NCBI RefSeq assembly: GCF_006345805.1
Contig: NW_021833053.1
Coordinates: 1-64,000 of the forward strand
Direction of reading: 5' to 3'
From: Octopus sinensis
Lineage: Eukaryota
Length of the DNA: 64,000 bases
The translations under genes were made by a program, and so were the position numbers. The stretch's first letter is position 1, and every line of letters begins with the position of its first letter. Shown here piece after piece: positions 1 to 63,569 of this stretch. The notes below the pieces were generated by a model, which was given only the letters and a program-made list of their open reading frames with translations, ran no database searches and had not been told where the DNA came from.

Positions 1-490
1 GAGTATTCGCTGAGTAATCCTATCTACTGATGCAAGTTTATCACCAAAAGACTGCACGTAGTCATGCATCACTGCAAACTCAGGAGGCCGGTTTTTCATC
101 ATGTATGAAGCACTTATGTTGTGAAGGGAGTTGGTGACTCGGCTGATCAAACCTTGTCCTTTCTTTTTATGGGCATTGAATTCCTGAAATTTCAAACCAA
201 ATACATTAATGCAGAAGGCATATAGCATAGTGGTTAAATAACTTGGCTCTCAATAAGTTTGTGGGTTTAATTCTCAAACTGGGAGCTGCATTGTACTCTT
301 AAACAAGGCAATTTACTTCACTTGCTTCACCCCATGCAGCTGGTAAACAAATATCAAGACTAACAAAGCCCCTGGTTAGTGTCAAGTGAGTATAGCAGTG
401 TTAATAGATCAGTAACAGGACCAAAATTCTTCAGGCAGAAAAAAGGATACATCTAGTAGTACACTGCTATTTCCTCTCTTTACCCTTTAT

Positions 491-2361: not shown

Positions 2362-2523
2362 CCAAGCTTTAGCAGTGAGAAATACATGAAAATGTTTATC
2401 AAAGGACAAGACTGGATGATCAGCGATTCGGGTGAGGAATTTCTGTAATGCTTGTTGTCGAACTCGTAGAAACTCAGAACTGAAACGGTCCAAACGCCGT
2501 AGGCTGTGTTTAGCAGGCAGAGG
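2362..2523 (-). CDS. SNX30: Sorting nexin SNX30/7-like, coding exon 4 (PX domain C-terminal half: [54 protein letters not shown])
   Basis: 162 nt, flanked by TTCAG acceptor and GTAAGA donor, phase 0/0. PX motifs PLPxK, RxxxLxxFL and HPVL. Confidence 0.93.
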
Positions 2524-4176: not shown

Positions 4177-4287
4177 AGGCACCAAATGTGTCGGATAACC
4201 ATCTTCCAATCTCTGACGTAACCATACAAAGTCATTGTATCTACGCCTCACACAGTATTCATGTGTATCAAATTCCTCCCTTGTAGT
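4177..4287 (-). CDS. SNX30: SNX30/7-like coding exon 3 (TTREEFDTHEYCVRRRYNDFVWLRQRLEDGYPTHLVP)
   Basis: 111 nt, TACAG acceptor, GTAAGT donor, phase 0/0. Classic PX VRRRYxDFxWL motif. Not in the ORF track because it has no start codon. Confidence 0.95.
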
Positions 4288-14250: not shown

Positions 14251-14285
<35 letters not shown>

Positions 14286-14475: not shown

Positions 14476-14516
<41 letters not shown>

Positions 14517-14554
14517 ATTGTTTAACATCCACTTTCCATGCTAGCATGGTTTAT

Positions 14555-14599
<45 letters not shown>

Positions 14600-17078: not shown

Positions 17079-18154
17079 CTGATATGGGCAACTTCTCACA
17101 TTTTTTTCTCTAAATTTTCCCTTGTCTAAAATAGCGGTCAACTCCTTTTCTTCTAGCAACTTATGTTACCTTCCCTTACATGAAGAAAAACTCACATGAA
17201 AGTATCCAAGTATTGCCTTCACTTTTTTCTATGAACCAACTAAATATGAAATTCCCTACCTGTATTTTGTAGAGGTGCATGGTTTAGTGGTTCGGGTGTT
17301 GGCACTCATGATAGTAAGATTGTGGGGGCAATTCCTGGACCAGGCAATACAAAACACTTCATTTCACATTGCTCCAGTCCACTAAGCTGACAAAAGTGAG
17401 TACTCCTTCAAGGGTCCAGCATCTTGTCCAGGGCCAAAATATATGCACTGCAGGAACCAGAAAACTGGTCCTAAGAGTCTGTAGGACTCAGAAAGGATCT
17501 ACCTGTATATGGAAAATAGCAACTGTGTCTAAAGTCCTACATTATGCCTTTTACTAAAGCTGGGAAGGTTATGCATACACTGATGAACAAATGTTGAAGC
17601 TTGACCCCTAAATTATCAATGTATACATATTTGTATATCCATATTGCTAGATCCCTGGATGCATCCAAAGTATACAGTTTTAGTCATTTTTATCATTTCT
17701 AAGATGTTTTCTCCAAACTTGTATGATTGTCTTCATCTTAGGTATCATCTCCAAAGGTATTAGACTTAATCAAAACAAACCATGTATTCTTCATTCTATA
17801 AGATGATAAAGCCTTTGGAATGCAGCTGTATAACACTAGAATATTTCCTACAGAACTTACTGTTAAAAGCAGGCTGATATACTTAACCTAGCAAGCCTAA
17901 AATAATTTTAGATGAATTAAAATGCTGATTAAATGACAATTCTTTTAAAGAAAGGGAAAGAACAGTGAAATGCAAATTGTATAATTTATGGAAATGGACA
18001 TGCAGTAGAGAATGAGTCTGATCTTGTTAAGTATGGCAAGCACTCTGCACATGATTCAGTCTTATAACGTTATGATAAATTTGGTCAAGTTGCTTTGAGA
18101 AATTAGAGACCAAAGATGAGAAAACTTGAAAAGATGAGATATTGTAAGAGAAAG

Positions 18155-18191
<37 letters not shown>

Positions 18192-18989
18192 TATGAAGTG
18201 CATGAGAATAGAGAAATTACCAAAATGGTGGTGGATTCTATGTTGGTCTCAACAACAAGAATTTCTACATATAACTGGCTGAGTATTCCATAGTGTTAAT
18301 GCAATTTTTAGACTGGATCAGTGGGACACAATGAAACAAAGTTGGCCATTTGAATTTTGGATAAAATACAGAAAGAAAGAGAGAGAAGAATTTTACCCAA
18401 GTAGTGGACTGATATTTTATCAACCCAAAAAGGATGAAAGGCCAAGTTAACCTTAGCAGAATTTTAACTCAGAATGCAAGGAGTAGAAATAAGTACTGCA
18501 AGGCATTGAATCTGATTCCATGAATATTCTATCAATTTGCTACCTCATGGGTTTATATGATGGGCTGATACATGTTGAAAGTGTCATGATATGTTGAATA
18601 CATGGGGGTATGCTAAATGTGAAACCACATGGTCTAGTGGTCAGGATGTCAGATTCACAATAGCAAGGATATGGGTTTGATTTCTGGACCTGGCAGCAGC
18701 ACATGTACTTTTGTGAAAAACACTTTATTTCACATTGGTCCAGTCCTTTCAGCTGAAAGTGAGTGCCACCAATAGCTGGGGGATTAACCTTGCAATGGAC
18801 TCATACTCTGTTCAGAGAACCATCTGGTTTTCTCAGTTGCTTAAATAACTGAAAAACCCGGATAAGTTCCAGCCTAAAGAATATGTAGGCTGATGACAAA
18901 CTTTTTTCTTTTTTTTGACAAAAGGTTAATGTTCCCAGATGAACCAATACACGACTGAAGCACACTGGTTTCAAATATCAGCACAAGGC

Positions 18990-19590
18990 CAGCAAATTGG
19001 GGAAAGGAGTAAGTCAATTACACCGACCCAGTGCCCAACTGGTACTTATTTTATCGACTCTGAAATGATGAAAGGCAATCATGGACCTCAGAGGTATTTG
19101 AACTCAGAAGGTGGCAAGCAGGCGGAAACATTAGCATGCCAGGCGAAATGCATAGCCGTATTTCGTCTGCCGTTATGTTCTGAGTTCAAATTCCACCGAG
19201 GTCGACTTGGCCTTTCATCCTTTCGGGGTCGATAAGTACCAGTTACGCACTGGGGTCAATGTAATCGACTTAATCCGTTTGTCTGTCCTTGTTTGTCCCC
19301 TTGTGGGTAGTAAAGAAATAGGTATTTCGTCTGCTGCTATGTTCTGAGTTCAAATTCCACCGAGGTCAACTTTGCCTTTCATCCTTTCGGGGTTGATTAA
19401 ATAAGTACCAGTTACGCACTGGGGTTGATGTAATCGACTTAATCCGTTTGTCTGTCCTTGTTTGTCCCCTCTGTGTTTAGCTCCTTGTGGGTAGTAAAGA
19501 AATAGGTATTTGAACTCAGAATGTAGACGAACAAAATGCCACTAAGCATTTTCCCCAGCCTGCTAATGATTCTGCCAGCTCGCCGCCTTA
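18990..19590. mobile_element. Nested family A SINEs: a + strand partial dimer (19110-19503) inside a - strand copy
   Basis: The minus-strand copy is split between ~18990-19109 and 19504-19590. The 18-bp direct repeat AGGTATTTGAACTCAGAA lies at 19092 and 19504. Confidence 0.75.
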
Positions 19591-20169
19591 AATTGAAGCA
19601 CATTGAAAGGTAATATATTGCAGACTACACATGCCAAACTTCAAACAAACCTTCAATCCCCAATATTCTATACTTTCAGATCTATTGTATAACTTGTACA
19701 CTCCGTTTTTCTCTTGTACCACTACTGCTTATCTGAATTCTATTTTTTTGTCTAACTCCTACTTAAAAATCACTTGGTGATCCAGTCTCTTTCCTACCAT
19801 AGAACCTATCATTTCTCTCATTCCTAAACTTCCTTGTACATTCCTAATCCTTTTCCTCCAGATTTAAAAACTCTGCAAACCACCATGTTTGATTTACACT
19901 ACCACTAACTTCTAGAAGTTTGAATTAACTTCACCCAGATATTACTAAACCACCATTAATGTCTAAAGATGACAGAGCATCTTTGTTTGACACTAGATAA
20001 TTAAAAAGTATGTATTGGCAATTATGATAACGAGAGGATGTTAGATATCTTAAGAGAGAGGGTGATGATGTTGGCAATGATACTGAAACATTATATTGGC
20101 AAAGATATCTATGGTAACACAGGCAATAATAATGATAATGTTGGTACAATACTGATGATGGCAATGACA

Positions 20170-21065
20170 GCAATGACAATAGTGTTGTCATTTTAGCAAT
20201 GATGATAGCGTTGACATGATAGCAATGATGATAATGCTGGCACGATAGCAATGACGATAGCGTTGACATGAGAGCAATGCTGATAGCGTTGACATGAGAG
20301 CAATGCTGATAGCATTGACATGAGAGCAATGATGATAGCATTGACATGATAGCAATGATGATAGCGTTGACATGATAGCAATGATGATAATGCTGGCACG
20401 ATAGCAATGATGATAGTGTTGACACGATAGCAATGATGATAGCGTTGACATGATAGCAATGATGATAGTGTTGACATGATAGCAATGATGATAGTGTTGA
20501 CATGATAGCAATGACGATAGCGTTGACATGATAGCAATGACGATAGTGTTGACATGATAGCAATGATGATAATGCTGGCACGATAGCAATGATGATAGCG
20601 TTGACATGATAGCAATGATGATAGCATTGACATGATAGCAATGATGATAGCGTTGACATGATAGCAATGATGATAATGCTGGCACGATAGCAATGATGAT
20701 AGCGTTGACATGATAGCAATGATGATAATGCTGGCACGATAGCAATGACGATAGCGTTGACATGAGAGCAATGCTGATAGCGTTGACATGAGAGCAATGC
20801 TGATAGCATTGACATGAGAGCAATGACGATAGCGTTGACATGAGAGCAATGACGATAGCGTTGACATGAGAGCAATGACGATAGCGTTGACATGAGAGCA
20901 ATGACGATAGCGTTGACATGAGAGCAATGACGATAGCGTTGACATGAGAGCAATGACGATAGCGTTGACATGAGAGCAATGACGATAGCGTTGGCATGAT
21001 AGCAATGACAATAGTGTTGGCATGATAGCAATGACAATAGTGTTGGCATGATAGCAATGACGATA
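20170..21065. repeat. 26-bp minisatellite, ~34 units (GCAATGATGATAGCGTTGACATGATA and variants)
   Basis: The 26-aa periodicity in three minus-strand ORFs equals 3 x 26 nt. At least three unit variants are interspersed. Confidence 0.95.
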
Positions 21066-21148: not shown

Positions 21149-21340
21149 TTTAGTGTTAATCCGGAATGTTATATAGGATTCCAAGGTACTTGTGTGTTTC
21201 TCGGGATTATCAACCATAACAAATAAATCCCTAGTTTCTGAATCAAAGTCATCATCCAATTTGAAGTTGGCTATTAGACTTGAACTACAAGACACAGTCA
21301 TTTCAGACTTTGACGACGTATCTAAATCCAGGCTTTCAAG
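21149..21340 (-). CDS. SNX30: SNX30/7-like coding exon 2 (LESLDLD...[39 protein letters not shown])
   Basis: 192 nt, TTTCAG acceptor, GTAAAC donor, phase 0/0. The ETRDLFVxVDxPxKH...ExYITxRI signature is recalled from SNX30. Confidence 0.95.
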
Positions 21341-40407: not shown

Positions 40408-40530
40408 CTCATCTTCACTGTCTTTATCCAAAGCACTAGTTAATGGATCCTTGAAAGTTTCTTTTGTATTAGAATGAATGTCGGCAGTGTTATCTTTCCC
40501 AGACATACAACTATCCTGGGGAGCTGCCAT
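40408..40530 (-). CDS. SNX30: SNX30/7-like coding exon 1 (MAAPQDSCMSGKDNTADIHSNTKETFKDPLTSALDKDSEDE)
   Basis: ATG in GATATGG context, 123-nt open frame and GAG|GTGAGC donor. Phase 0 matches exon 2, and the exon is adjacent to the CCAAT cluster. Confidence 0.8.
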
Positions 40531-40876
40531 ATCTGTTGTTATTGATCGTCGCTTACATCCATCACTATATTATACACCCACAACATGTAACGTCGTCAAC
40601 GATTGGTCCGTTTTCCAACGAAGCAACCAATCGAATCACATCTGACGAATACCTCTTTGCGTTTAGATTAAGGAAATATATATTTCTTTTTACTAACATT
40701 CTATTTCATTGGTTCAATCGGAAATATTGTGAAAAATCGAGCCAATGAGAGAGGCTGTTATTTGGGTTTCTCTAGCGACGTACTTTCATTCAGTGATGTT
40801 ATCATTGTGGGTCGCCGCCTCATGCTTTGTAGTCACATTTTAAGTGATTTTCGCCGACCACCAGACCTTGGGGACG
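40531..40876. promoter_or_regulatory. Bidirectional promoter/5' UTR region shared by SNX30 and INIP
   Basis: 346 bp between divergent ATGs. CCAAT boxes at 40602-40606 (rev), 40627-40631, 40708-40712 (rev) and 40742-40746. Locally CpG-rich. Confidence 0.8.
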
Positions 40877-40901
40877 ATGTCTTTTCCAGGGCCAGGCCAT
40901 G
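40877..40901 (+). CDS. INIP: INIP/SOSS-C coding exon 1 (MSFPGPGH + G)
   Basis: GACGATGT start, 25 nt, G|GTAACG donor. Phase 1 joins exon 2 to give GAA (Glu). Confidence 0.75.
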
Positions 40902-47683: not shown

Positions 47684-48140
47684 ATCATCATTTAACATCT
47701 GCTTTCCATGCTAGCATGAGTTGGACGATTTTGACTGAGGGCTGGCGAACCAGATTGCTGCACCAGGCTCCAATCTTGATCTGGCAAAGTTTCTACAGCT
47801 GGATGCCCTTCCTAACACCAACCACTCCAAGAGTGTAGTGGGTGCTTTTTATGTGCCACCGGCATGGGGGCCAGTCAGGCGGTACTGGCAATAACCTCGC
47901 TCACATCTTTTTACACGTGCCAGTGAAGCGACGTTGGTAACGATCACGCTCGAATGGTGCCCTTTTACGTGCCACGGGTACGGAAGCCAGTTGGCTGCTC
48001 TGACAATGATCACGCTCGGATGGTGCTCTTGGCACCCTACTAGCACATGCACAAGTGCCACTAAGGCGATGCTGGTAACGATCATTCTCGAATGGTGCCC
48101 TTTTATGTGCCACTGGCACGGAAGCCGGTTAGCCGCTCTG
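47684..48140 (-). mobile_element. Family C LINE 3' UTR element (long form)
   Basis: Reverse complement of the family C module, homologous to 4705-5135. Confidence 0.8.
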
Positions 48141-51365: not shown

Positions 51366-53090
51366 AAGTATCATTGTAACTTTAGCAGAATCAATACTTT
51401 GAGCTATTTTTGTTTGAAAAACACCAGTTTGCTGCCGTTCTTGCTGATATGTGTGTGCGTATATCTTTCATATGCTGTTTCTTGCCAGTCAAGTGACTGT
51501 ACCACAGCCCTTTTGTGAAGCTATTGTCTGTCTATGGGCTTTGCTGAAGTCAAGTGTATGAGTTTGTTTATGTGTGACTGGAGAACAAATTTCCAGTGGT
51601 TCTGGAAATGGAGGCATGGCTGTGTGATAAGAAGTTTGCTTCCAACTACATGGTTCCAGGTTCAGTTCCACTGCTTGGCACTTTGGGCATGTGCCTTCTA
51701 CGGTAGCCAAGGTTGATCAAAGCCTTGTCAGTAGGTTTGGTAGATGGAAACTGAAAGAAGCCCGTTGTGTGTGTGCGTTATTGTCTCTTTGTCTTGACAT
51801 CATGTGGTAGTTGTAAATGAGTCCCCATCATGCAAATAATGTCCCTTGTTTCCAATCTCCCTTGACTGGTCTTGGCAAAATATTAAGATTACATTACTTG
51901 GAAACAACATATGAAGGTGGGTAACAAGAAGAGCATTCAGCCTTAGAAAATAAACCCCTACAAAATTCCATGCAAGCTAAGCATGGAAAAATGGATGTGA
52001 AATCAATGATGATGATGATAATTGCATCATTATACACTTTTTCCTTATTTGACAATTTGGCTCATACTGATGATGCAGGCCATCACTAATAATTCTCCTG
52101 TCATTGTTTAAGATTTTGCTTTCACCTTTGATTCCTGTACAAAACTTTACACATCTCCAAAATGTTATTCCTTCAGCAGTTAATCTTGAGCCATGTGACA
52201 AATTGAAAATGAATGTATTTAATCTTATCCTGGTCCCATCAGACTTTCTTAATCCTTGCTCTTCACACTCTCTAATCCTTCCTCTCCACTTATGGTATTT
52301 TTTTTTTTTTTTTTACTCCACCGTTGCCCAATTCTCTCCTTTATTGTGGTTTACTTCTCTCTTTTCTGGGTTTTAGTTACTGAATCCCTGTGCTCTTTTT
52401 TTTCAATTTGGTACTTATATTATTGGTGTGTATTTGTTGAATCATAAATCACATGATGTAAAAGAACACTGCAATAAACATCCATGCTGGGCGAGACTTC
52501 TGAATGGCCTTCCTGGCGTCTCTTTCTCTGCTAAAGTGTTGAAGTTATATTGGTAATTCCTGACATGTCAATCACAAATAACATCTGTATTTGAAGTGAT
52601 GTCCAATAATTCTTTGAGTCAGTATTCAACATGTGAAGACCTTTCAAGCATATGTTGCCATTCCAGCTTTAGTTGGGTAGATATATGATTAAAGACATTC
52701 CATCCTTGGCCAGCTCTCTTTAACTTTTTATGCATAGTCCTGCCAAAACAGTCACAGATGTCTGGTGCAGGCTTTGGCCAAGCCAGCCCTTGTGGTACTG
52801 TTCCACCCATGCTAGTATGGAACACAGGCATTAAATGATGATGATACACACACACATTTTCCATTTACCAAATTAAACTATTGTTCGACTCCGGAGTAAT
52901 AGAAGAAGCACTTGCGCAAAGTGCTGCACGGTGAAAGTGAACTCAAAACCACACACCCATGACTAACATTTTATTTCCACTCCAATCCTGTGCTTATTGA
53001 GGGCCATCACAAGCTAATCATCATTTCTAATATTGTTCATCCTGAGAAAAAGTTCATTTATTGGAATCATTTCTCTTTTTGTCTTTCTAG

Positions 53091-53171
53091 AACGAGCTAA
53101 CCGGAAACAGCTATTAGAGCAATTAGAAGAGAAAAAGAAGCTACTTCGTATGCAGGCTCAACATAACCAAG

Positions 53172-53220
<49 letters not shown>

Positions 53221-53232
53221 CAGCAGCAGCAA
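53091..53232 (+). CDS. INIP: INIP/SOSS-C coding exon 2 (E-RANRKQLLEQLEEKKKLLRMQAQHNQG-S19)
   Basis: TTTCTAG acceptor and AA|GTAAGT donor (phase 1 to 2). Resembles the human SOSS-C segment NKNRVAILAELDKEKRKLLMQNQSS (recalled). Confidence 0.85.
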
Positions 53233-54180
53233 GTAAGTAATTACCATCTCATCACTTCTTTTAAATCTATCGACTAATTAAGGATTATCTGGTATTTAAG
53301 TGCATATATATATATGCATTTTTGTACTTAACAAGAAAAGGAAAAAAGACAAAATTTGTTACTCAGTCAGACTAGTTACTGTTTAATTAAACCTAATTAG
53401 TAAAGGTCCTAATCTATTATATCTATACTTCATAGTTGTACTTGTTTCAAAAATGATTTGATCTGCGGTTGTGCGTTAAAACTTAAAGTATATCTTATGC
53501 AAGAATCATGCAAATCATTTAAGTTTAGAAATGCTTCATCAGATTGATGAAGGCTGAACCTTCAAAGTCATTGCCACACTCTTATAAAAGTATAAAGGAG
53601 ATGTGCTCTACAAAAACTATTCAATAACTCTCAGTAATTCTTTAGTTTCATGTAAAATTGTTTTATTATTATAGGTCAGCATGTAATTGACTATCCAACT
53701 ATAAAATTTCAGGCCTTGTGCCTTTAGTAGAAAAGATTTTGTTATGTTTGCTCACTATTTATTTCCCAACGACAACTTATAGCGGACGCCACCAAAGAGG
53801 ATCAATATTATCGTTAAAGGCATCAAATTGCTGTGATCCTTTACATGATAACTGAAGAGGATTTGGCGACATTCTGTGTTTGTGTTGTCCATGTTTGTGC
53901 TTATATATTATGCGTGTATCCCCTACTTCTTCGCTCTCCTGTGTGACCCTTGTTTCTTTCTGCGTTCCTTTCTGTGGAAGAGCATAAAAGACTTTTTCAC
54001 TTCCTGAGCGTTATACTAATACATCTGTTTGCTTTCTACACCACCTGTCTTCGTTTTTTGGGGTTTTTTCGTGAATTCTCCCCTACATATATATATAAAT
54101 ATATATGCACACACACACACACATGTATATATATATATATACACACACACACACATGTAATATATATACACACACACATG

Positions 54181-54214
<34 letters not shown>

Positions 54215-54631
54215 TGTATATATATATATATACACGCATGTATATATGTATGTAACATATTATGTTTATAAAGGGTGGGGATAGTTTCCTGGATGAAAAC
54301 TGCAGCAGTTTGTCTTTCAGTAGTCAACATAGGTTAAGAATATAAAAAGATTTTAATCTAGAGCTGCTTTTATTGCATAATTTGAATGTGTGTGTATTTA
54401 TCTTATAAAGTGACAACAAAATTGGGTTTTTTGTTTCACTTTATAAGCAATGATCTCAAGAACTAAAACAGAAATGGATCATGCAGAATATGTGCTTGTA
54501 CGGTATTTGTGGTTATGACTGTTCCATAATGTTGGAGTTTAGTTACTGCTTCATTTACTCAGAGATACCTTATTTTTTCTAATATATAATACCTGTACAT
54601 CATCTACAAACCTAATATATATATATATAGC

Positions 54632-54679
54632 AAAAACTGTCCGACGAATGGCAACGTGAAGCTCAGAGTAACAGGTTTT
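54632..54679 (+). ncRNA. Minimal hammerhead-like motif, U4C family (copy with G15.1)
   Basis: AAAAACTGT-CCGACGA-ATG(GCAA)CGT-GAAG-CTCAGAG-T-A-ACAGGTTTT. Confidence 0.55.
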
Positions 54680-54721
54680 GTTGAATTTTCTGCTGCTTTA
54701 AATAAAGTATATATATATATG

Positions 54722-55710
54722 TGACCAAGTTAGTAGTGGAGGTGGATGCTCAGAGAGTATCACCACTAGAATACGAATAGCCTGGGCAAAGTTTAGAAAG
54801 CTCCTACCCCTACTGGCGACAAAGAGTCTCTTGCTCAGAGTGAAAGGTAGATTGTATGATGCATGTGTGCGAACTGCCATGCTTCACGGTAGTGAAACAT
54901 GGGCTGTGACTGCAGAGGACATGCGTAGACTTGAAAGAAATGAAGCTAACATGATCCGCTGGATGTGTAATGTCAGTGTGCACGCACGACAGTGTAAGCA
55001 CCCTGAGAGAAATGCTGGACATAAGAAGCATCAGATGTGGTGTGCAAGAGCGACGCTTGCGATGGTATGGTCATGTACTGTGGATGGATGAGGAGAGATG
55101 TGTGAAGAAATGCCGCTCCCAAACAATTGAAGGTATCGGGGAGAGGTAGACACAGGAAGACATGGGATGAGGTAATCAAGCATGACCTTAGAGCATTGGG
55201 CCTCACAGAGGCAATGACGAAAGACCGAGATCTCTGGAGATATGCTGTGACTGCAAAGACCCGGGCTGCTTCCTGCACCAGTTCCGCATAGCCCCTGTCC
55301 GTTCAAAGTACCTTGGATTTCAGAACAACCCGCTGTGCTTGAGGAGACCTATTGAGTCAAGTACACCAACATCAAAATAAATATCAATGGAAATAGTAGT
55401 TGTGATACCTGTGCCAGTGGCACGTAAAAAGCACCATCCGAACGTGGCCGATGCCAGCGCCGCCTTGACTGGCTTCCGTGCCGGTGGCATGTTAAAAGCA
55501 CCAACCGATTGTGGCCGCTGCCAGACTCACCTGGCACATAAAAAGCACCCCCTACACTCACGGAGTGGTTGGCGTTAGGAAGGGCATCCAGCTGTAGAAA
55601 CACTGCCAGATCAGACTGGAGCCTGGTGCAGCCTCCTGGCTTCCCAGACCCCGGTCGAACCGTCCAACCTGTGCTAGCGCGGAAATCGGACGTTAAACGA
55701 TGATGATGTG
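54722..55710 (+). mobile_element. 5'-truncated RTE-like LINE 3' end with contiguous family C 3' UTR and (GAT)n tail
   Basis: LRVKGRLYDACVRTAMLHGSETW, RWMCNV and WYGHV motifs run directly into the family C module. Confidence 0.9.
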
Positions 55711-57732
55711 TGTGTTTGTGTATTTATATATAAATGGGTGTGTGGTTGTTTAGCCGCAGATCAGACATGGCCAGATAGACGTATGTCCAAAGGTATTGAA
55801 ACTGTGAGTGTACCATCTTATATCATGGAGGACTACATTATCCAATTTTAAGATGGATTTATTATATGTAGATCAACATAAAGAAAAGGTGAAAAGATCA
55901 AGGGAAAACTAACAAATCCCTACAGCTGCTGTGGCAGAAAAAAGATTAAAGAATTATTCCCAGCTGAATGGACAGCGTATCGCATCTACTTCTATGGTTG
56001 CAACTGTTACTATTTCGCTCTCGTCCAGTTACTGCAGTATTTAGTGTATGTCCTACACTAGCAAGGGTGTAATTTGAAATTTTGGTTGTTATTTCTAACA
56101 TAGTACGACTAACGTAGATGCGCCTGTATTCTAGCGGTTAGTGAATTTATAACAAAGGACATAATTGTTGCGCGTTACTTCGTGTTTCAAATTTTCCTTT
56201 ATATAAGCTAGTGTAATGTTAAATGGCTATTAGGGCGATCGGGTGGAAGTAGTCCTGACAGTAATGTACACTGTAATGAGGGGAAGTAACTTTTGCAAGT
56301 TTCCTCAGATTTATTAATTTCTGTTTTATCTAATATGGAGGTAATTTGAAATTTGATTGCTATTTCTAGCTAATAGAGCGACCACGTAGAAACGCCGTGT
56401 AAACTCTAACAAGGGCAACAACTCTTGGAAGTTATTAATTCTGAAGACTATTTCCTCTATTAGCTTCGGTTGGCCCTCAATTTCCTGATGTTTTTGCTAA
56501 TAACATCAATGTAGTTGATTGACCTTCTTCCTTTATTAGGGTGCAGATGTGTCCAAAATATAGCATTGACCAGAGAAGCCTTCTCTGTGTTGAGAAACAG
56601 AAATATCATAGAAATGAAATTGTAGGGAAAAAAACTTCCGTTTTCAACCTATAAATGGACTATGGATTGAACATCTATGCAGTCGCTTGATCTGCAAAAA
56701 TCGCAACCAAATTCTCCCGAATCGTAGGGAGAATACATTAGACCAGCGTTTTCCAACATATTCCCCCAGACCTCGCTATAGCTTTCTAGAAAAATGAATG
56801 CCCCACCAGTAATTAATAAAAAATAACTTTATTTTAAATATTTTATCACAATTCGATTCCAGCATGGAAGACATGCTAAATGATGATGATGACTAAAGAA
56901 TCTACTGGTAACTCTTTTAAGTACTGAATACAAAAAAGAAAAGTATATTATTGACTAAGACAAAAGGCATACATCACTTTAACGAGAGCCTTGTACCTGG
57001 TGACTACGGCAGATTTCATTAGCTTCAGCTGTAAATCACCATTTTTTATAATTTCAAGTCTGCTTTCAACCAAATAAAAGACATGGGGAAATGAGACAGT
57101 ATTTGGTATTTCTTTTCAACTTCATCACATAGTCACATCTCGGTACCTTTCATTTCGAGCAAAGTATTCACTGGTTCATCACGTTGCAATTCTGATAGCT
57201 TATTTTGAAACTGCATTGGAACTTCAGAGATTTATACAAGCAGTGGTTGACTTAACCAAGAGGCTGTGGAAAAAGGATTTTCACAACTCCAGGTCCCACA
57301 GAAAAAAAAACTTTGGATCCCACACCCCATCACAAGTTTGTCAGGTCCCACTAATATAGTGATTCCCCACATTAGGAATTGCTATATAAGATAAATGAAA
57401 ATGTAGTCCTATATGCATTATGCATCAAGAAAGGCTGGGATAGCCATAGTTTCAAGGTCTTTCATCTAAAGTTTGCCAGATTAGGGCTAACCTGGAGTTG
57501 AACAATAAATACTCTAATATAATAACTAGAAAACTTGAGTTGTAATTTGGTTATATCCCAGTATAGTTACATGTATTAATTGTGCACTTTGAATATTAGT
57601 TGTATCTATATTATTTAATCTTTGAACTAACTCTACACTGCTTCTTACTTGATAATTTTGCTTTCCAAATTGAATTCTTGAAATCTGTTACCTGGGTTTT
57701 CCCCACCGTTTCATCTTTATTGTCTCCTTCAG

Positions 57733-57931
57733 TTCGTGTAATCCAGGAAGCACACTAACCATACCATCAGCACCCAGTACTCCAACAAACAATGGAAATG
57801 CTTCCACCAGCATACTACCTCCAGTTGTCAGTCCCACCATGCCTCCTACCCCAGTAAGCGTCTCCAGTGTGCCTGGAAGTGTTGGTCGGGAAGTCAATCG
57901 TGTCGTTGTGAACCCTTTAACAGCTTCTTCG
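57733..57931 (+). CDS. INIP: INIP coding exon 3, S/P/T-rich (N-SCNPGSTLTIPSAPSTPTNNG...VVVNPLTASS)
   Basis: Polypyrimidine tract plus CCTTCAG acceptor, 199-nt open frame and TCG|GTCAGT donor. Phases 2 to 0 bridge exons 2 and 4 exactly. Confidence 0.75.
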
Positions 57932-58719
57932 GTCAGTATATTCCTCAACATTTATGTAATTCATATATTTACAAATTTCACTGGTCTTAGTATTTTATGC
58001 TTTTTCACTTGATATAACTGCAGAAAACGCATCCTAGGTTCCTCCCTCCACTCCTCTCCTTACCAACTCATTCACTATATAACTCCTTAATTCACTCTAC
58101 TGCTCCCTAATTCATTGCTCTTCTACATTCTTCTATATATCTTGCCCACCTCTCATTCACTATTTCTATTCCTTTGTTTACTACCCCTATCTCTTCATTC
58201 ACTATTACTACCCCACATTCAGTAACTCTATCTGCATTCACCAACTTTGCCCCTGTTCTCTACCCTTCATTTACTATCCATTCACTACCTCTACACTTCA
58301 TTCATTTTATCTCTGTATTCATTCACTATATTATACCCCTTATTTATTTTACTCCATCTATATCTATTCCTTCACTATCTGTTCACTGTTTCCACTCCAT
58401 GTGTATCCCCTATTCACTTCCTCTACCCCTCACTCATTCCCCTTCTTTTATTCTCCCTCTTTTTCTCCATACTTCTTTATGCACCTTCTCTTTCTTCATA
58501 GACTTACCCATCTTATATATGATAGAACTCACAGCTGTAAGTAGAGGGCACGTTTTGTTATTCTTAAGAATCATTAGCTTTTGTGCAAAGTTCAAATTCT
58601 CTTTATGCTCTTGGAAAAGTCAACAAAAAAATAGTCCAGTGTCTACATTCAGGGTGTGGTACTTCCTCGAATGTAGAATTAACATTTACACCTAGCAGAG
58701 GGCATATTGCAATGTGTAT

Positions 58720-58732
58720 GTGTATGCATGTA

Positions 58733-58792
<60 letters not shown>

Positions 58793-58944
58793 CATATTTA
58801 TTTATATATATATATATACATACATACATATTTATTTATATATATATATATATACATACATACATATTATTTATTTATTATATATATATATACATACATA
58901 CATATTTATTTATTTATATATATATATATATACATACATACATA

Positions 58945-58976
<32 letters not shown>

Positions 58977-59002
58977 CATACATACATATATATTTATTTA
59001 TT

Positions 59003-59038
<36 letters not shown>

Positions 59039-59082
59039 ATATTTATTTATATAATATATATATATATACACACATACATACA

Positions 59083-59123
<41 letters not shown>

Positions 59124-59175
59124 ATACATATTTATTTATATATATATATATATATACATACATACATATTTATTT
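58720..59175. repeat. Compound (GT)n/(TA)n/CATA/TTTA microsatellite-minisatellite
   Basis: Recurrent CATACATATTTATTT(AT)n blocks. The I/Y-rich ORFs are artefacts. Confidence 0.95.
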
Positions 59176-59494
59176 ACTAGCAGTATCGCCCGGCGTTGCT
59201 CAGGTTTGTAAGGGAAATAACTATAAAGCATTTTTAGAGAGTTATAGCCAAAAAATAGCAAAAAAATGGAAAAAAATTATGGTAAATTTTTTTTTGAGAT
59301 TTAAAAAAGGTGGAGTTGCGTCCCCTAGACAGTTTGTGGTTCGTGTTTCCGATTCTCGACCCCATGTCGAATTTATCGATTTTTTTTAGAACTGGGGGAA
59401 CTTTTCGGTTGAAAGCCGTGGTCAGGGTGAGGGTACAAGCAAACAGACACACAGAAACACGCACAGACAAACTGCCGTTTATATAGAGAGAGAT
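59176..59494 (+). mobile_element. Non-autonomous Helentron/HINE-like element
   Basis: Starts ACTAGCAGTATCGCCCGGCGTTGC, has CAGACA-type repeats near the end, ends TTTATATAGAGAGAGAT, and sits between T residues. Confidence 0.55.
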
Positions 59495-59527
59495 TTATTT
59501 ATATATATATATACACATACAGACATT

Positions 59528-60785
59528 TTGAGAGCTTTGGGAGAGGGCTCCGACACCGATGTCATCTACCTTGATTTCAGTAAGGCCTTCGACAGGGTCG
59601 ATCACAAGATCCTATTGAAAAAACTATCCAACATTGGTGTCTCTGGAAAGTTACTGAAATGGATCAAGTGTTTCCTGACAGACAGATCTCAACATGTTGT
59701 AGTTGAAGGGGTAAAATCAAGCCCAGCCAAAGTCTGTAGTGGCATTCCGCAAGGCACTGTGCTGGGCCCACTTCTTTTCATCATCTACATTGACATTAAT
59801 GACATCATCAAGCACAGCAACATAAAAATCTTTGCAGATGATTCCAAGCTACAGAGGGTCATAAATGAGGCGAGTAACCGGACATGCCTTCAGTCAGATC
59901 TACTGGCTGTTATCCAATGGGCAGAAAAAAACAATATGCTGCTGAACGAGGATGAATTTGAGTTAATCCACTTTGGAAAAGAGGATGCCCTGAAACTCCC
60001 ATACTCCCTTCCTTCAGGTGAAACTCTCGCGGCGTCCAACAACATCAGAGACTTGGGAGTAATTGTGGACAACAACATAAGCTGGGCCACTCATATAAAC
60101 ACCAAAGTTGACATGGCCCGCAGAATGTGTTCCTGGATTCTCAGAACTTTCCAGTCGAGAGATATCCACACCATTATCCTTCTCTTCTCCACTTTTGCCC
60201 GACCCCACCTTGAATACTGTTGTCCACTGTGGTCTCCCCACACAATACAAGGTATCATAAAAGTTGAAGCACCTCAAAGGGCAATCACAAAAAAGATAGA
60301 TGGCATGACAGGCCTCGACTATTGGGGTCGACTAGAGAAGCTAAAACTCTATTCTCTCCAACATCGTCGTGAGCGCTACATCATCTGCATGATGTGGAAA
60401 ATATTCCATCAGCATTGCCCAAATGATGTTGGTATGACCTTTAAGGTACATCCAAGGCTTGGGCCCCGTGCCATCCGCCCAAAACAAAAATCGCACTCTC
60501 ATCTCATAACAACAATACGGCACAATTATTTCACCTCAATTGGCCCCGCTCTCTTTAACATTACACCAAAACACATTAAAACAGAAACTGACCCTATAGG
60601 GTTCAAGAAGTCTTTGGACAGATTCCTTCAAGAAATCTCGGATAAACCCCCTACACCCGGATATGTCTCTGTAAACAATAACTCTCTACTTGAGTGGGCC
60701 ATAGTGCCCAAATTCTGACTTGAAAGACTTCACCAGGTGGTGTTATTAAGTTAGACATGGCCGAAACCTATCAAAGTATCAAAGT
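59528..60785 (+). mobile_element. 5'-truncated CR1/L2-group LINE with an uninterrupted 396-aa RT C-terminal ORF
   Basis: YLDFSKAFDRVDH, GIPQGTVLGPLLF, FADDSKL, RDLGV and RPHLEYC motifs. Short 3' UTR ending in tandem TATCAAAG. Confidence 0.95.
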
Positions 60786-60807
60786 ATATATACATACATA
60801 TATATAT

Positions 60808-60869
<62 letters not shown>

Positions 60870-60870
60870 A

Positions 60871-61265
60871 AGGCGCAGGAGTGGCTGTGTGGTAAGTAGT
60901 TTGCTAACCAACCACATTATTCCGGGTTCAGTCCCACTGCGTGGCATCTTGGGCAAGTGTCTTCTGCTATAGCCCCGGGCCGACCAATGCCTTGTGAGTG
61001 GATTTGGTAGACGGAAACTGAAAGAAGCCTGTCGTATATATATATATGTGTGTGTGTGTATATGTTTGTGTGTCCGTGTTTGTCCCCCTGGCATTGCTTG
61101 ACAACCGATGCTGGTGTGTTTACGTCACTTAGCTGTTCGGCAAAAGAGACCGATAGAATAAGTACTGGGCTTACAAAGAATTAGTCCCGGGGTCGATTTG
61201 ATCGACTAAAGGTGGTGCTCCAGCATGGCCGCAGTCAAATGACTGAAACAAGTATAAGAGAGTAA
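60871..61265 (+). mobile_element. SINE family B (young, CpG-retaining copy)
   Basis: Full head to tail, flanked by (TA)n. Confidence 0.85.
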
Positions 61266-61340
61266 AGAGTATATATATATATATATACATACATACATAC
61301 ATATTTATATATATACATACATATATATATATATATATAT

Positions 61341-61614
61341 CACGTGACCGACCAGGCTATCAGATGTTGCTACACATCGCTGGTCACAATGCGCTTCGCA
61401 TTGTTTTAGCCACCCTGCTGGCTGAGCAAGCAGGCCAACAGAAGAAAGAGTGAGAGAAAGTTGTGGCGAAAGAGTACAGCAGGGATCGCCACCACCCCCT
61501 GCCGGAGCCTCATGGTGATTTAGGTGTTTTCGCTCAATAAACACTCACAACGGCTGGTCTGGGAATCAAAACCGCGAGTCTGCTGCCCTAACCATTGGGC
61601 CATTGCACCTCCAC
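61341..61614 (-). mobile_element. tRNA-derived SINE, family D
   Basis: Minus strand begins GTGGAGGTGCAATGGCCCAATGGTTAGGGCAGCAGACTCGCGG..TTGATTCCC, a tRNA-like head. Flanked by TA/CA repeats. Confidence 0.65.
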
Positions 61615-61687
61615 ATACACACACACATATATATATACATACACACACACACATATATACTTTATTTAAAGCAGCAGAAAATTCAAC

Positions 61688-61735
61688 AAAACCTGTTACT
61701 CTGAGTTTCCCGTTGCCGTTCATCGGACAGTTTTT
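61688..61735 (-). ncRNA. Minimal type I hammerhead-like motif, U4C family
   Basis: Minus strand reads AAAAACTGT-CCGATGA-ACG(GCAA)CGG-GAAA-CTCAGAG-T-A-ACAGGTTTT. GUA triplet, GNRA loop II, near-palindromic helix III. Confidence 0.6.
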
Positions 61736-61852
61736 GCTAGCAAAAAAAAAATAAAGCATATTACTCTACCACTGGTATTTGAGTACTCTTTTTTCCACCT
61801 TGTTTCACATTTATATGTTTACTCCGGTGTGTGTATATATATATATATATAT

Positions 61853-61885
<33 letters not shown>

Positions 61886-62195
61886 TGTGCAGGCATGGCT
61901 AAATAGTTCACTTCTCAAGTACATGGTTTCAGGTTCAATCCTTGGTCTTTTACTACAGCTCCATGACCTAGCAACAGACATTGTATAGTTTAACTTCAGT
62001 CAAAATTTCTGGTTGGAATGTGGCAGTGATGTTTGTTGACAACAAACTGTCCACTAGCTTTGTGCTTTTGAATATCTCTGGTGTAAAAGAAAAAAAAACT
62101 TGAAAAACTGGTTAGGGTTGGTGAATCTTGTCATAACAATTCTGCCTGAAATGCTAACACAGAAAAGCAGATATTGAATGAACAAATAAGTAAAA

Positions 62196-62257
<62 letters not shown>

Positions 62258-62337
62258 AATTGCAGCATGGAAGGTGTTTGTAAGCCATTTAAGAAACACA
62301 CAAAAGCCGTTCGATTCACTTCAACATTTAAGTTTAA

Positions 62338-62387
62338 TTTGTCAAAATATTTTCGTCGCTAAAATCCGCGACCTGTTCACTGACAAA
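62338..62387 (-). ncRNA. Minimal type I hammerhead-like motif, G3-C8 variant
   Basis: TTTGTCA-GTGAACA-G-GTCGC(ggatttta)GCGAC-GAAA-ATAT-T-T-TGACAAA. Confidence 0.65.
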
Positions 62388-62407
62388 AATCCGATGCAGC
62401 ACGGATT

Positions 62408-62457
62408 TTTGTCAGTGAACAGGTTGCAGATTTTAGCGACGAAAATATTTTGACAAA
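62408..62457 (+). ncRNA. Minimal type I hammerhead-like motif, G3-C8 variant
   Basis: TTTGTCA-GTGAACA-G-GTTGC(agatttta)GCGAC-GAAA-ATAT-T-T-TGACAAA. Confidence 0.65.
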
Positions 62458-63226
62458 TTAAACTTAAATGTTGAAGTGAATCGAACGGCTTTTGTGTGTT
62501 TCTTAAATGGCTTATAAACACCTTCCATGCTGCAATTGTTTTCGTTTTAGCACACGATCTCAGATCAAATCACTTGCTATGCGAGTACATCTCTGTAATA
62601 TATATATATACACACACACACATCATCATCATTTAATGTTCATGTTCCATGCTAGCATGGTTTGGACAGTTTGACAGGATCTGGTGGATCCAAGGACTAC
62701 ATATGGTTGATGATGATAATGATATTTTACTGCAACCAAATAAGTACCAATAGTAGACTGAATTCCATTCTGTCATACATGCATCCTTTCTTCCCAGAAC
62801 TAACTTTGTGAATTGTCAAAATGAAGAACTATAAAGAGATCAAAAATACATTTGAGCTACATGTAGGTACTGTGGTAAATATTTACCATGGAGAGCTGTA
62901 CCATGCCGAGAATGAAGTTTTTGATGGCATAACAAATTTGGCTGTACTCAAGTAGACTCGTCCACCACAGCAGAATTGATACCAGTGCTGGTGCCACATA
63001 AAGAGCATCCAGTACACTCTGTGGAATGGTTGGTCTTAGGAAGGGCATCCGACCATGCCAGAACAGACAATGGAGCCTGATGTGGCCCCTGGCCTTACCA
63101 GCTCCAGTCAAACCATCCAACTCATGCCAGCATTGGATAACTGACATTAAACAATGATGATGATGTTTGACCATAGCTATATTTTAAAACACTCAATAAT
63201 TGAGAGATATTTAATGAAATAACAAT

Positions 63227-63437
63227 CTTCGTGCTGCATCACGAAGTTTTGTCAGTGAACAGGTCACCGTCTCAAAGCGACGAAAATATTTTGACAAATT
63301 AAATTTAAATGTTGAAGTGAATCTAGCGATTTTTGTGTGTTTCTTAAATGGCTTATAAACACCTTCCATGCTGCAATTGTGTTCATTCCAGCACACGATC
63401 TCAGATCAAGTCACTCGCTATGCAAATACATCTCCAT
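63227..63437 (+). mobile_element. Second copy of the pLTR-like repeat, with a 5' hairpin and a G3-C8 hammerhead-like motif (63248-63298)
   Basis: High similarity to 62402-62597. Starts with the hairpin CTTCGTG-ctgcat-CACGAAG. Confidence 0.8.
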
Positions 63438-63521
63438 AATGACCTAATATTGTTTCAACTAAATTAAAATTTAAAACATGCATTTAACTTTGTTCTTTGT
63501 TTTCTCCTCCTCCTACAACAG

Positions 63522-63569
63522 AGCTATGATGCTGCTCCAATGACTCCCGCGCAGAGGGCTGCACTACAG
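63522..63569 (+). CDS. INIP: INIP coding exon 4 (SYDAAPMTPAQRAALQ)
   Basis: Long polypyrimidine tract plus AACAG acceptor and CAG|GTAAAT donor, phase 0/0. AQRAALQ matches the human SOSS-C QQKAALQ (recalled). Confidence 0.85.

What the first reader, a model, noticed from the sequence alone, without database searches (positions are those of the whole stretch)
40408..40901. SNX30 and INIP head-to-head on a 346-bp CCAAT-rich bidirectional promoter, possibly ancient microsynteny with vertebrates
Seen: divergent ATGs at 40530 (-) and 40877 (+), with four CCAAT boxes in alternating orientation. Recalled: human INIP and SNX30 are also divergent neighbours on chromosome 9q32, though further apart. Established: NF-Y sites are enriched at bidirectional promoters. 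Retention of the pair would be notable because coleoid genomes are heavily rearranged.
Basis: partly seen in the sequence, partly recalled or inferred. Interest (0 to 1): 0.7.

Follow-up and report, generated by a model that had tools for sequence, protein, structure and literature searches.

The report
SNX7/30–INIP head-to-head shared promoter
Two unrelated housekeeping genes, a sorting nexin (SNX7/30) and the DNA-repair subunit INIP, start 346 bases apart on opposite strands around a CpG-rich stretch with four NF-Y-type CCAAT boxes; a mussel and a fish have the same back-to-back arrangement, so it is a real but ordinary example of an anciently conserved gene pair.

Summary
On the minus strand, ATG 40530 opens exon 1 of an SNX7/30 orthologue (PX domain, E=4e-22; 75% identity to Lottia). 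On the plus strand, ATG 40877 opens a 25-nt first exon that splices in phase to 53091-53232 and gives an INIP/SOSS-C N-terminus (E=5e-6 over the whole six-frame window).

The 346 bp between them hold four CCAAT boxes in -,+,-,+ order. All four fit RRCCAATSR, and the whole 64 kb has only seven such sites. The same 346 bp hold 19 CpGs (o/e 1.39, against 0.39 for the window).

The pair is also head-to-head in the teleost Menidia (about 1 kb apart) and in Mytilus edulis. In Mytilus I found an unannotated INIP 209 bp from the SNX7_30 ATG, with three CCAAT boxes between them. In human the two genes are neighbours about 31 kb apart. No INIP lies within 10 kb of SNX7/30 in Lottia, Bulinus, Capitella, Pollicipes or Adelges.

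Best reading: an ancestral bilaterian head-to-head pair that keeps a compact, probably NF-Y-driven, bidirectional promoter. Transcription start sites and NF-Y binding are inferred, not shown. This is a new member of a known kind (about 600 such pairs are described). I could not verify that the window is coleoid.

The parts
40408..40530 (-). SNX7/30 coding exon 1 (ATG at 40530, 41 codons, phase 0, donor GT at 40407-40406)
   Evidence: The motif FKDPL-S-LD and the MAAP start are shared with Bulinus, Mytilus, Mya and the unannotated Lottia exon 1. It joins exon 2 in frame with no residues missing relative to orthologues.
40531..40876 (.). 346-bp intergenic region; inferred shared (bidirectional) promoter, CpG-island-like
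   Evidence: 19 CpG, o/e 1.39, against 0.39 for the window. This is in the top 0.6% of 346-bp windows, and the CpG enrichment is confined to about 40540-40880.
40600..40608 (-). CCAAT box 1 (ggaCCAATcg), pointing toward SNX7/30, 72 bp from its ATG
   Evidence: fits RRCCAATSR. It forms an 8-nt perfect inverted repeat with box 2 (I6).
40625..40633 (+). CCAAT box 2 (caaCCAATcg), pointing toward INIP, 25 bp from box 1
40663..40696 (.). AT-rich palindromic centre (TTAGATTAAGGAAATAT/ATATTTCTTTTTACTAA) between the two box pairs
   Evidence: I2, I3. Its function is unknown. A TATA-like TATATAT sits here, but in the wrong place to serve either ATG together with upstream CCAAT boxes.
40706..40714 (-). 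CCAAT box 3 (gaaCCAATga), pointing toward SNX7/30
   Evidence: It is part of a 25-nt, 76% complementary inverted repeat with box 4 (I1).
40740..40748 (+). CCAAT box 4 (gagCCAATga), pointing toward INIP, 34 bp from box 3 and 135 bp from the INIP ATG
40877..40901 (+). INIP/SOSS-C coding exon 1 (MSFPGPGH + G; 25 nt, phase 1, donor GTAACG)
   Evidence: The Menidia INIP exon 1 has the same 25-nt coding length and phase, and the Mytilus exon 1 has the same phase.
53091..53232 (+). INIP/SOSS-C exon 2 (ERANRKQLLEQLEEKKKLLRMQAQHNQG, then about 19 Ser); acceptor tttctag, donor gtaagt, ends in phase 2
   Evidence: (E=5.4e-6 over the whole six-frame window). The C-terminal exons are not in the window.
21149..21340 (-). 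SNX7/30 exon 2
4177..4287 (-). SNX7/30 exon 3 (start of the PX domain)
2362..2523 (-). SNX7/30 exon 4 (PX domain)
1..183 (-). SNX7/30 exon 5, which runs off the left end of the window

Best explanation
The locus is the shared 5' end of two unrelated, divergently transcribed genes. One is the single invertebrate orthologue of vertebrate SNX7/SNX30 (minus strand). The other is INIP/SOSS-C (plus strand).

Shown: the two start codons are 346 bp apart. The space between them is an unmethylated-looking CpG island with four NF-Y-type CCAAT boxes. The boxes form two back-to-back inverted pairs, spaced 25 and 34 bp, and in each pair one box points at each gene.

Inferred: NF-Y, which is universal in eukaryotes and works in either orientation, binds these boxes and opens a nucleosome-free region. 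Pol II then initiates in both directions. SNX7/30 transcription would start roughly 40535-40560 and INIP transcription roughly 40800-40830, which places the boxes at the usual -60 to -100. Because each gene's promoter elements lie inside or against the other's, a breakpoint between the genes would cripple at least one of them. That would explain why the pair has stayed head-to-head since the bilaterian ancestor in vertebrates and in at least two mollusc lineages, while it was lost in others.
For: Gene identities:
- SNX7/30: Pfam PX E=4.3e-22; 57 SNX30/SNX7 homologues, best Lottia at 75% identity.
- INIP: the invertebrate SOSS-C profile hits only 53018-53233(+), E=5.4e-6. Exon 1 adds 5.5-6.7 bits and aligns from profile position 1. 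The profile members are named SOSS complex subunit C in Lingula, Candidula, echinoderms and spiders.

Gene models:
- All splice sites are canonical and all phases are consistent.
- INIP intron 1 is phase 1 in the window, Mytilus and Menidia; exon 1 is 25 nt in both the window and Menidia.

Promoter signature:
- 4 of the window's 7 RRCCAATSR sites fall within 145 bp here; 0 of 300 simulations reproduce this.
- 19 CpG, o/e 1.39 against 0.39, confined to the intergenic stretch.
- The boxes form inverted pairs.
- The 25 and 34 bp spacings are close to the 24-27 and 36 bp peaks reported for double CCAAT boxes in human NF-Y-bound regions (PMC4889920).
- An array of 4 CCAAT boxes bound by NF-Y drives the <200-bp Mrps12/Sarsm bidirectional promoter (PMC1802594).

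Conservation:
- Menidia: SNX30(-) and INIP(+) about 1 kb apart.
- Mytilus edulis: INIP exons on the strand opposite to SNX7_30 and upstream of it, E=3.6e-19 for the C-terminal exon; 209 bp between the ATGs, with three CCAAT boxes, the nearest 68 bp from the SNX ATG (72 bp in the window).
- Human: the genes are adjacent.
Against: - There are no transcript, CAGE, ATAC or ChIP data, so the TSS positions, co-expression and NF-Y occupancy are all inferred.
- Between the window and Mytilus the intergenic DNA shows no alignable conservation beyond motif content (local score 20 against shuffles at 18.7±2.5).
- The Menidia intergenic kilobase has no CCAAT at all. The CCAAT architecture is therefore not what is conserved across phyla.
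- The linkage is absent within 10 kb in Lottia, Bulinus, Capitella, Pollicipes and Adelges, so the constraint can be broken.
- In human the gap is about 31 kb, too wide for a shared core promoter.
- A pyrimidine-rich AG at about 40864 could in principle be an acceptor for an upstream INIP 5'UTR exon.
- The Pfam SOSSC model itself did not hit the 56-residue fragment.
Confidence: 0.75

Rival explanations
1. Two abutting but independent unidirectional promoters. The left CCAAT pair (40602/40627) would serve only SNX7/30 and the right pair (40708/40742) only INIP, separated by the AT-rich centre. The genes would then be close neighbours without shared regulation, and proximity would be retained simply because so little DNA lies between them to break.
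For: The boxes fall into two separate pairs 81 bp apart, with an AT-rich palindrome between them. Each pair lies at a plausible distance from one ATG (72-97 bp and 135-169 bp). The human genes are about 31 kb apart and Menidia has no CCAAT between them, so the genes can work without a shared core.
Against: Each pair contains one box pointing at each gene. NF-Y arrays are experimentally bidirectional in the closest precedent (PMC1802594). The same orientation survives across more than 500 My in three lineages. A 200-350 bp target is small, but the flanking 12-19 kb introns show this genome tolerates large insertions elsewhere and not here.
Confidence: 0.2
2. The true INIP first exon, or the TSS of either gene, lies elsewhere, so the 346-bp interval is not the promoter of both. 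One example is the formal candidate MSGAGFGQASPC at 52758-52794, 300 bp upstream of exon 2. Another is an unseen non-coding 5' exon.
For: 26 ATG-plus-phase-1-donor candidates exist between 40000 and 53090. The one at 52758 has a faint resemblance to MSGPGSGQ-type INIP N-termini. No RNA data are available.
Against: The 52758 candidate scores 2.7 bits lower, and its own residues are not aligned to the profile. Its donor is poor (GTACTG), it has C at -3, and no CpG enrichment surrounds it. The 40877 exon matches the MSF consensus, has the same 25-nt length and phase as the fish exon 1, and sits in the CpG island in the same head-to-head position as in mussel and fish.
Confidence: 0.07
3. The head-to-head arrangement arose independently in molluscs and vertebrates (convergence) rather than by descent from the bilaterian ancestor.
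For: Five of the seven sampled invertebrate loci lack the linkage within 10 kb. Among protostomes only one phylum is positive.
Against: Convergence would need the same two unrelated genes, in the same 5'-5' orientation, with no gene between them, in teleost, human, mussel and this window. Loss of microsynteny in fast-evolving lineages is the documented norm (PMC3514665). Independent assembly of an identical pair is far less parsimonious.
Confidence: 0.05

Closest known systems
Mrps12/Sarsm (Sars2) bidirectional promoter of mouse and human (Zanotto, Shah & Jacobs 2007, PMC1802594)
   Same: Two unrelated housekeeping genes are transcribed divergently from a short shared region (<200 bp there, at most 346 bp here). 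That region carries an array of four CCAAT boxes, and there the boxes are shown to bind NF-Y and to drive both directions.
   Different: NF-Y binding and dual-reporter activity are demonstrated there and only inferred here. The genes differ. Here the boxes form two inverted back-to-back pairs, and the organism is a mollusc.
Conserved ancestral microsyntenic pairs (CAMPs) of Irimia et al. 2012 (PMC3514665)
   Same: Unrelated genes kept adjacent across bilaterian phyla, preferentially in 5'-5' orientation with short intergenic regions. Coregulation through shared cis-elements is the proposed constraint, and lineage-specific losses occur.
   Different: I could not check whether INIP(C9orf80)-SNX30 is among their roughly 600 pairs, because the supplements are not held. 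No paper in the library links the two genes evolutionarily. Lottia, which keeps most CAMPs, has lost this one.
Human INIP-SNX30 locus on 9q32
   Same: The same two genes are immediate neighbours (PMC9345823). Their divergent orientation in human is from my memory of the annotation, not a tool result.
   Different: About 31.5 kb separate them in human (hg19 coordinates), so they cannot share a core promoter. The teleost Menidia keeps them about 1 kb apart.

Membership tests
SNX7/SNX30 subfamily of SNX-BAR sorting nexins | PX (phox homology) domain | tested here: met
   PF00787, E=4.3e-22, residues 110-193 of the 257-aa partial product.
SNX7/SNX30 subfamily of SNX-BAR sorting nexins | C-terminal BAR (Vps5-type) domain | not testable with these tools
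   The gene runs off the left end of the window after exon 5. Only the first residues after the PX domain are present. Orthologues carry PF09325.
SNX7/SNX30 subfamily of SNX-BAR sorting nexins | Closest relatives are SNX30/SNX7 proteins rather than other sorting nexins | tested here: met
   All 57 hits are either named sorting nexin-30, -7 or SNX7_30, or are unnamed PX proteins. Lottia is 75% identical and vertebrate SNX30 55-57%. As an invertebrate gene it is co-orthologous to both vertebrate paralogues.
INIP / SOSS complex subunit C (Pfam SOSSC, PF15925) | N-terminal helix motif (Q)NRKILExLxxxKKxL preceded by a short MSF/MAF start | tested here: met
   A profile of 27 invertebrate members gives E=5.4e-6 over the six-frame window, and 29.6 bits with exon 1 included.
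INIP / SOSS complex subunit C (Pfam SOSSC, PF15925) | C-terminal motif GYFITQDSSFGNLILPVLPR | not testable with these tools
   There is no plus-strand match anywhere in 53233-64000, so the exon must lie beyond the window. The same profile finds it at E about 1e-19 in the Menidia and Mytilus loci.
INIP / SOSS complex subunit C (Pfam SOSSC, PF15925) | Match to the curated Pfam model | tested here: not met
   PF15925 was not reported for the 56-aa exon 1+2 fragment at E<=1. Only about 36 informative residues are available, followed by a serine run, so this is a limit of the fragment rather than evidence against membership.
Bidirectional (head-to-head) promoter | Two genes on opposite strands with 5' ends less than 1 kb apart and no gene between them | tested here: met
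   The ATGs are 346 bp apart, which bounds the TSS distance provided neither gene has an upstream non-coding exon.
Bidirectional (head-to-head) promoter | Mapped divergent TSSs and co-regulated transcription | not testable with these tools
   No expression data of any kind are available for this sequence.
Bidirectional (head-to-head) promoter | CpG-island character and NF-Y-type CCAAT enrichment | tested here: met
   CpG o/e 1.39 against 0.39 for the window. Four of the window's seven RRCCAATSR sites lie here.
Conserved ancestral microsyntenic pair (CAMP) | The same two unrelated genes adjacent, in conserved orientation, in deeply diverged bilaterian lineages | tested here: met
   Vertebrates: Menidia and human adjacency. 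Molluscs: Mytilus and this window. Absent within 10 kb in Lottia, Bulinus, Capitella, Pollicipes and Adelges.

The most novel reading that the evidence does not exclude
INIP-SNX7/30 is a so far undescribed bilaterian-age head-to-head pair. In molluscs (a mussel and this window's organism) its promoter keeps a specific architecture: back-to-back NF-Y boxes, with the first box about 70 bp from the sorting-nexin ATG. Vertebrates kept the linkage but replaced the CCAAT logic. That would make it a compact, testable case of promoter turnover under constant gene-order constraint.
Probability: 0.45. Interest if true: 0.4.

Novelty: new member of a known kind. Interest (0 to 1): 0.3.

Why it matters
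If it holds, this adds one clean, very compact example (209-346 bp in molluscs, about 1 kb in a teleost) to the class of ancient head-to-head gene pairs thought to be held together by shared promoters. It pairs an endosomal/autophagy sorting nexin with a DNA-damage-response and Integrator-associated subunit, with no obvious functional link between them. The contrast across lineages is informative: CCAAT-rich in molluscs, CCAAT-free in the fish, pulled 31 kb apart in human, and lost in gastropods. That gives a small natural experiment on what actually constrains such pairs. It does not open a new kind of biology. On the practical side, INIP is unannotated in the Mytilus edulis assembly examined, and the Lottia SNX7/30 model lacks its first exon.

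Tried and rejected
It gave only a weak exon 2 hit at permissive settings.
- Pfam did not report SOSSC for the exon 1+2 fragment.
- The word-indexed homologue search rejected a 36-aa query and found nothing with 42 aa. The human INIP search listed only vertebrates. I reached the invertebrate members through the representative-library profile search.
- Five contig look-ups returned nothing. The products were non-longest isoforms or not on record: Aplysia, Mya, Ptychodera, Antedon and Lineus. I therefore could not test any hemichordate, echinoderm or nemertean.
- Aligning the window's intergenic DNA to that of Mytilus showed no conservation above shuffles.
- Bare CCAAT clustering is not significant against a Markov null; only the extended consensus is.
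- I examined an alternative INIP first exon at 52758-52794 and rejected it.
- Rfam found no RNA family in the window.
- The literature search found no paper linking INIP and SNX30 evolutionarily. The Schmidbaur 2022 supplements do not mention either gene, and the Irimia 2012 supplements are not held.
- I could not determine the organism beyond 'mollusc-like with very long introns'. No cephalopod protein appeared among the hits.

Full report
**1. Observation**

- On the minus strand, an ATG at 40530 opens 41 codons (MAAPQDSCMSGKDNTADIHSNTKETFKDPLTSALDKDSEDE). They end at 40408, in front of a GTGAGC donor.
- On the plus strand, an ATG at 40877 opens MSFPGPGH plus one base. This ends at 40901, in front of GTAACG.
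- Exactly 346 bases lie between the two ATGs.
- Both ATGs are preceded by in-frame stops (42 and 36 nt upstream) with no in-frame ATG in between. Both have A at -3.
- CCAAT occurs at 40602(-), 40627(+), 40708(-) and 40742(+).

**2. Is it more than chance?**

The pentamer alone is weak evidence.
- The window holds 117 CCAAT where dinucleotide shuffles give 192.
- This is the only cluster of four or more within 145 bp in the real window. However, 232 of 300 Markov simulations contain such a cluster somewhere.

The flanks decide the matter.
- All four boxes fit the NF-Y consensus RRCCAATSR: ggaCCAATcg, caaCCAATcg, gaaCCAATga and gagCCAATga.
- The 64-kb window has only seven such sites, and four of them lie in these 145 bp.
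- Poisson P is about 1e-7, and 0 of 300 simulations reproduce the cluster.

The same 346 bp carry 19 CpGs (o/e 1.39). The window average is o/e 0.39, with 4.8±4.0 CpGs per 346 bp. That places the interval in the top 0.6% of windows, and the CpG enrichment stops at both ATGs. This is the signature of an unmethylated promoter island in an otherwise CpG-depleted genome.

**3. The minus-strand gene**

Human SNX30 used as a probe finds four further exons on the minus strand. With canonical AG/GT boundaries the exons are:

| Exon | Coordinates |
|---|---|
| 1 | 40530-40408 |
| 2 | 21340-21149 |
| 3 | 4287-4177 |
| 4 | 2523-2362 |
| 5 | 183 to beyond the left end |

All five are in one frame.
- The 257-aa partial product has a PX domain (E=4.3e-22).
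- Its 57 homologues are named sorting nexin-30, sorting nexin-7 or SNX7_30, or are unnamed PX proteins. The best are Lottia (75%), Aplysia (73%) and Mya (65%); vertebrate SNX30 is about 55-57%.
- It is therefore the single invertebrate co-orthologue of vertebrate SNX7 and SNX30, from a mollusc-like genome with very long introns (19 and 17 kb).
- Exon 1 is genuine. Bulinus starts MAAPGIIKDNEKTKFKDPLLTGFDKDSDDDG|MESLDLEAS. Mytilus has KRAFKDPLISGLDITDDAD|MESLSLDAS. I also found the unannotated Lottia exon 1 (…VKFKDPLLSGFDRESDDDG) 450 bp upstream of the truncated Lottia model.
- No residues are missing across the exon 1/exon 2 junction.

**4. The plus-strand gene**

The 25-nt exon is too short to identify on its own.
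- A permissive tblastn with human INIP picked out 53090-53218.
- The acceptor tttctag|AACGAG at 53091 is in the right phase. G + AA gives Glu, and the joined product reads MSFPGPGH-ERANRKQLLEQLEEKKKLLRMQAQHNQG followed by about 19 serines.
- A profile search of the 1.84-billion-protein representative library with vertebrate INIP returned short invertebrate proteins. Their N-termini include MAFQPPNTDRERQNRKILEQLEEQKKRLRMQ and MSVVNPSPGQERQNRKILEQLEEEKKRLRMQ. Where named, they are 'SOSS complex subunit C' of Lingula, Candidula, sea urchins, starfish and spiders.
- A profile of 27 of these hits exactly one piece of the six-frame window, 53018-53233(+), at E=5.4e-6.
- Adding exon 1 raises the score from 24.1 to 29.6 bits (16.6 to 23.3 without the serine run). 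The alignment then starts at profile position 1, on 'Msf'.
- The C-terminal hallmark GYFITQDSSFGNLILPVLPR is not in the window, so the gene continues past 64000.
- Among 26 formal alternatives for a phase-1 first exon between 40000 and 53090, only MSGAGFGQASPC at 52758 looks remotely similar. It scores 2.7 bits lower, and its own residues are not aligned to the profile. It also has a poor donor and no CpG enrichment.

**5. Promoter anatomy**

The four boxes form two inverted pairs.
- Pair 1: CGATTGGT/ACCAATCG, 8 nt perfect, boxes 25 bp apart.
- Pair 2: a 25-nt, 76% complementary repeat around TCATTGG/CCAATGA, boxes 34 bp apart.
- In each pair the left box reads toward SNX7/30 and the right box toward INIP.
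- The pairs are 81 bp apart, around an AT-rich palindrome at 40663-40696.
- The outer boxes lie 72 bp from the SNX ATG and 135 bp from the INIP ATG.

If NF-Y boxes sit at their usual -60 to -100 (established knowledge of NF-Y promoters), the TSSs would fall near 40535-40560 (minus) and 40800-40830 (plus). That would give short 5'UTRs.

Double CCAAT boxes in human NF-Y-bound regions peak at 24-27 and 36 bp spacing (PMC4889920). The closest precedent is the <200-bp Mrps12/Sarsm promoter. There an array of four CCAAT boxes binds NF-Y and is needed for both directions (PMC1802594).

All functional statements here are inference. No expression or binding data exist for this sequence.

**6. Synteny test**

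I fetched ±10 kb around orthologues and scanned all six frames with a combined INIP profile.

| Species (locus) | Result |
|---|---|
| Menidia menidia, teleost (L003/L004) | Annotated SNX30 (443 aa, minus) ends 1,015 bp from annotated INIP (plus): head-to-head. The profile recovers all INIP exons. |
| Mytilus edulis (L005) | Nothing annotated upstream of SNX7_30. The profile finds INIP exons on the opposite strand at 7961-7851 (E=1.4e-5), 6208-6140 and 5488-5363 (E=3.6e-19). |
| Lottia (L001) | No INIP within 10 kb, even after locating the true exon 1 at 9432. |
| Bulinus (L008) | No INIP within 10 kb. |
| Capitella (L002) | No INIP within 10 kb; an RWD-domain gene lies upstream instead. |
| Pollicipes (L006) | No INIP within 10 kb. 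|
| Adelges (L007) | No INIP within 10 kb. |

In Mytilus, a fitting first exon (ATGTCTATGGGACAAG|gtgacc, the same phase 1) lies at 9791-9776. That leaves 209 bp between the two ATGs. Those 209 bp carry three CCAAT boxes. The two nearest SNX point toward SNX and the third points toward INIP. The nearest is 68 bp from the SNX ATG, against 72 bp in the window.

In human, hg19 coordinates in a GWAS paper put INIP at chr9:115,448,790-115,480,387. SNX30 starts near 115,511,911, so the genes are neighbours about 31.5 kb apart (PMC9345823). Their divergent orientation in human is from my memory.

The most parsimonious reading is an ancestral bilaterian head-to-head pair. It was kept in vertebrates and in at least two mollusc lineages, and lost repeatedly elsewhere. 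This is the pattern documented for such pairs (PMC3514665).

**7. What is and is not conserved**

- Gene order, orientation, tight spacing and INIP intron phases are conserved. Intron 1 is phase 1 in the window, Mytilus and Menidia. Exon 2 ends in phase 2 in the window and Mytilus. The coding part of exon 1 is 25 nt in both the window and Menidia.
- The promoter sequence is not conserved. The window and Mytilus do not align above shuffled controls.
- The Menidia kilobase has no CCAAT at all.
- The CCAAT-rich design is therefore shared by the two mollusc loci only. It may be lineage-specific, or simply a common solution.

**8. Comparison with what is known, and novelty**

This belongs to a well-described class.
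- About 600 conserved ancestral microsyntenic pairs are known. They are enriched for 5'-5' orientation and very short intergenic distances, and shared cis-regulation is the proposed constraint (PMC3514665).
- NF-Y enrichment at bidirectional promoters is established (Lin et al. 2007 and Häkkinen et al. 2011, cited in PMC4889920).
- I found no paper that connects INIP and SNX30 evolutionarily. I could not inspect the CAMP list itself.
Euprymna retains 275 ancient microsyntenies against 216 in scallop (PMC9023564). I also could not confirm that the window is coleoid.
- Verdict: a real feature, correctly read, and a new member of a known kind. Interest is modest.

Noticed in passing
window 19931-21049 (-): A 372-aa intronless ORF lies inside SNX7/30 intron 2, only 100 bp downstream of exon 2 and on the same strand. 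It matches the C-terminal domain of tubulin folding cofactor D (PF12612, E=1.8e-7) and sits in one of the few other CpG-rich patches of the window (20621-20731). It may be a partial TBCD retrocopy. A PDB sequence search found no match.
   Followed up: partly
window 59528-60718 (+) and 58583-59389 (+): A 396-aa ORF with a reverse-transcriptase domain (PF00078, E=2.3e-15) lies inside INIP intron 2, so it is a retroelement. The neighbouring 268-aa ORF has no Pfam hit.
   Followed up: partly
window 53166-53231 (+): INIP exon 2 ends in a run of about 19 serines encoded by an AGC/AGT trinucleotide array (TRF: period 3, 20 copies). Other INIP proteins have Ser-rich linkers here but no homopolymer. 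It looks like a lineage-specific repeat expansion inside the coding sequence.
   Followed up: partly
window 40547-40583 and 40774-40812: Three short motifs (AGCGACG, AGTGATG, TTGTGGGT) occur in sense orientation in both proximal promoter halves, each about 220-225 bp from its inverted partner. Their order relative to the two ATGs is reversed. About 3.6 inverted 7-mer matches are expected by chance in 346 bp, so this may be coincidence.
   Followed up: no
L005 (Mytilus edulis GCA_905397895.1, CAJPWZ010000355.1) 5363-9791 (-): INIP/SOSS-C is present but not annotated in this assembly. Its intron 1 contains about three tandem copies of a roughly 200-bp element (8100-8600).
   Followed up: partly
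L001 (Lottia gigantea KB200521.1) 9432-9556 (+): The Lottia SNX7/30 gene model (LOTGIDRAFT_212744, 402 aa) lacks its first coding exon, MADNQEIPSPDEQDNAKDKAEDDVKFKDPLLSGFDRESDDDG. That exon lies about 450 bp upstream of the annotated start. A perfect CRE (TGACGTCA) lies about 150 bp upstream of it, and there is no CCAAT cluster.
   Followed up: partly
proteins P0228 and P0236: Some arthropod gene models fuse an INIP-like N-terminal part to a METTL5-like methyltransferase. P0228 is named 'METTL5 (predicted)' in Pycnogonum, and P0236 carries an NPPF motif. This suggests INIP has a different close neighbour in arthropods.
   Followed up: no
whole window; also 47791-47911 and 55351-55441: CCAAT is strongly under-represented across the window (117 against 192±14 expected from dinucleotide shuffles). 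Two further CpG-rich patches lie at about 47.8 kb and 55.4 kb, in stretches of higher G+C; they may be young repeats.
   Followed up: no
L003/L004 (Menidia menidia) 14083-19383 (+): Directly downstream of the fish INIP lies a second PX-BAR gene of a different class (SH3-PX-BAR, SNX9/18/33-like). Two sorting-nexin genes therefore flank INIP in this teleost.
   Followed up: no
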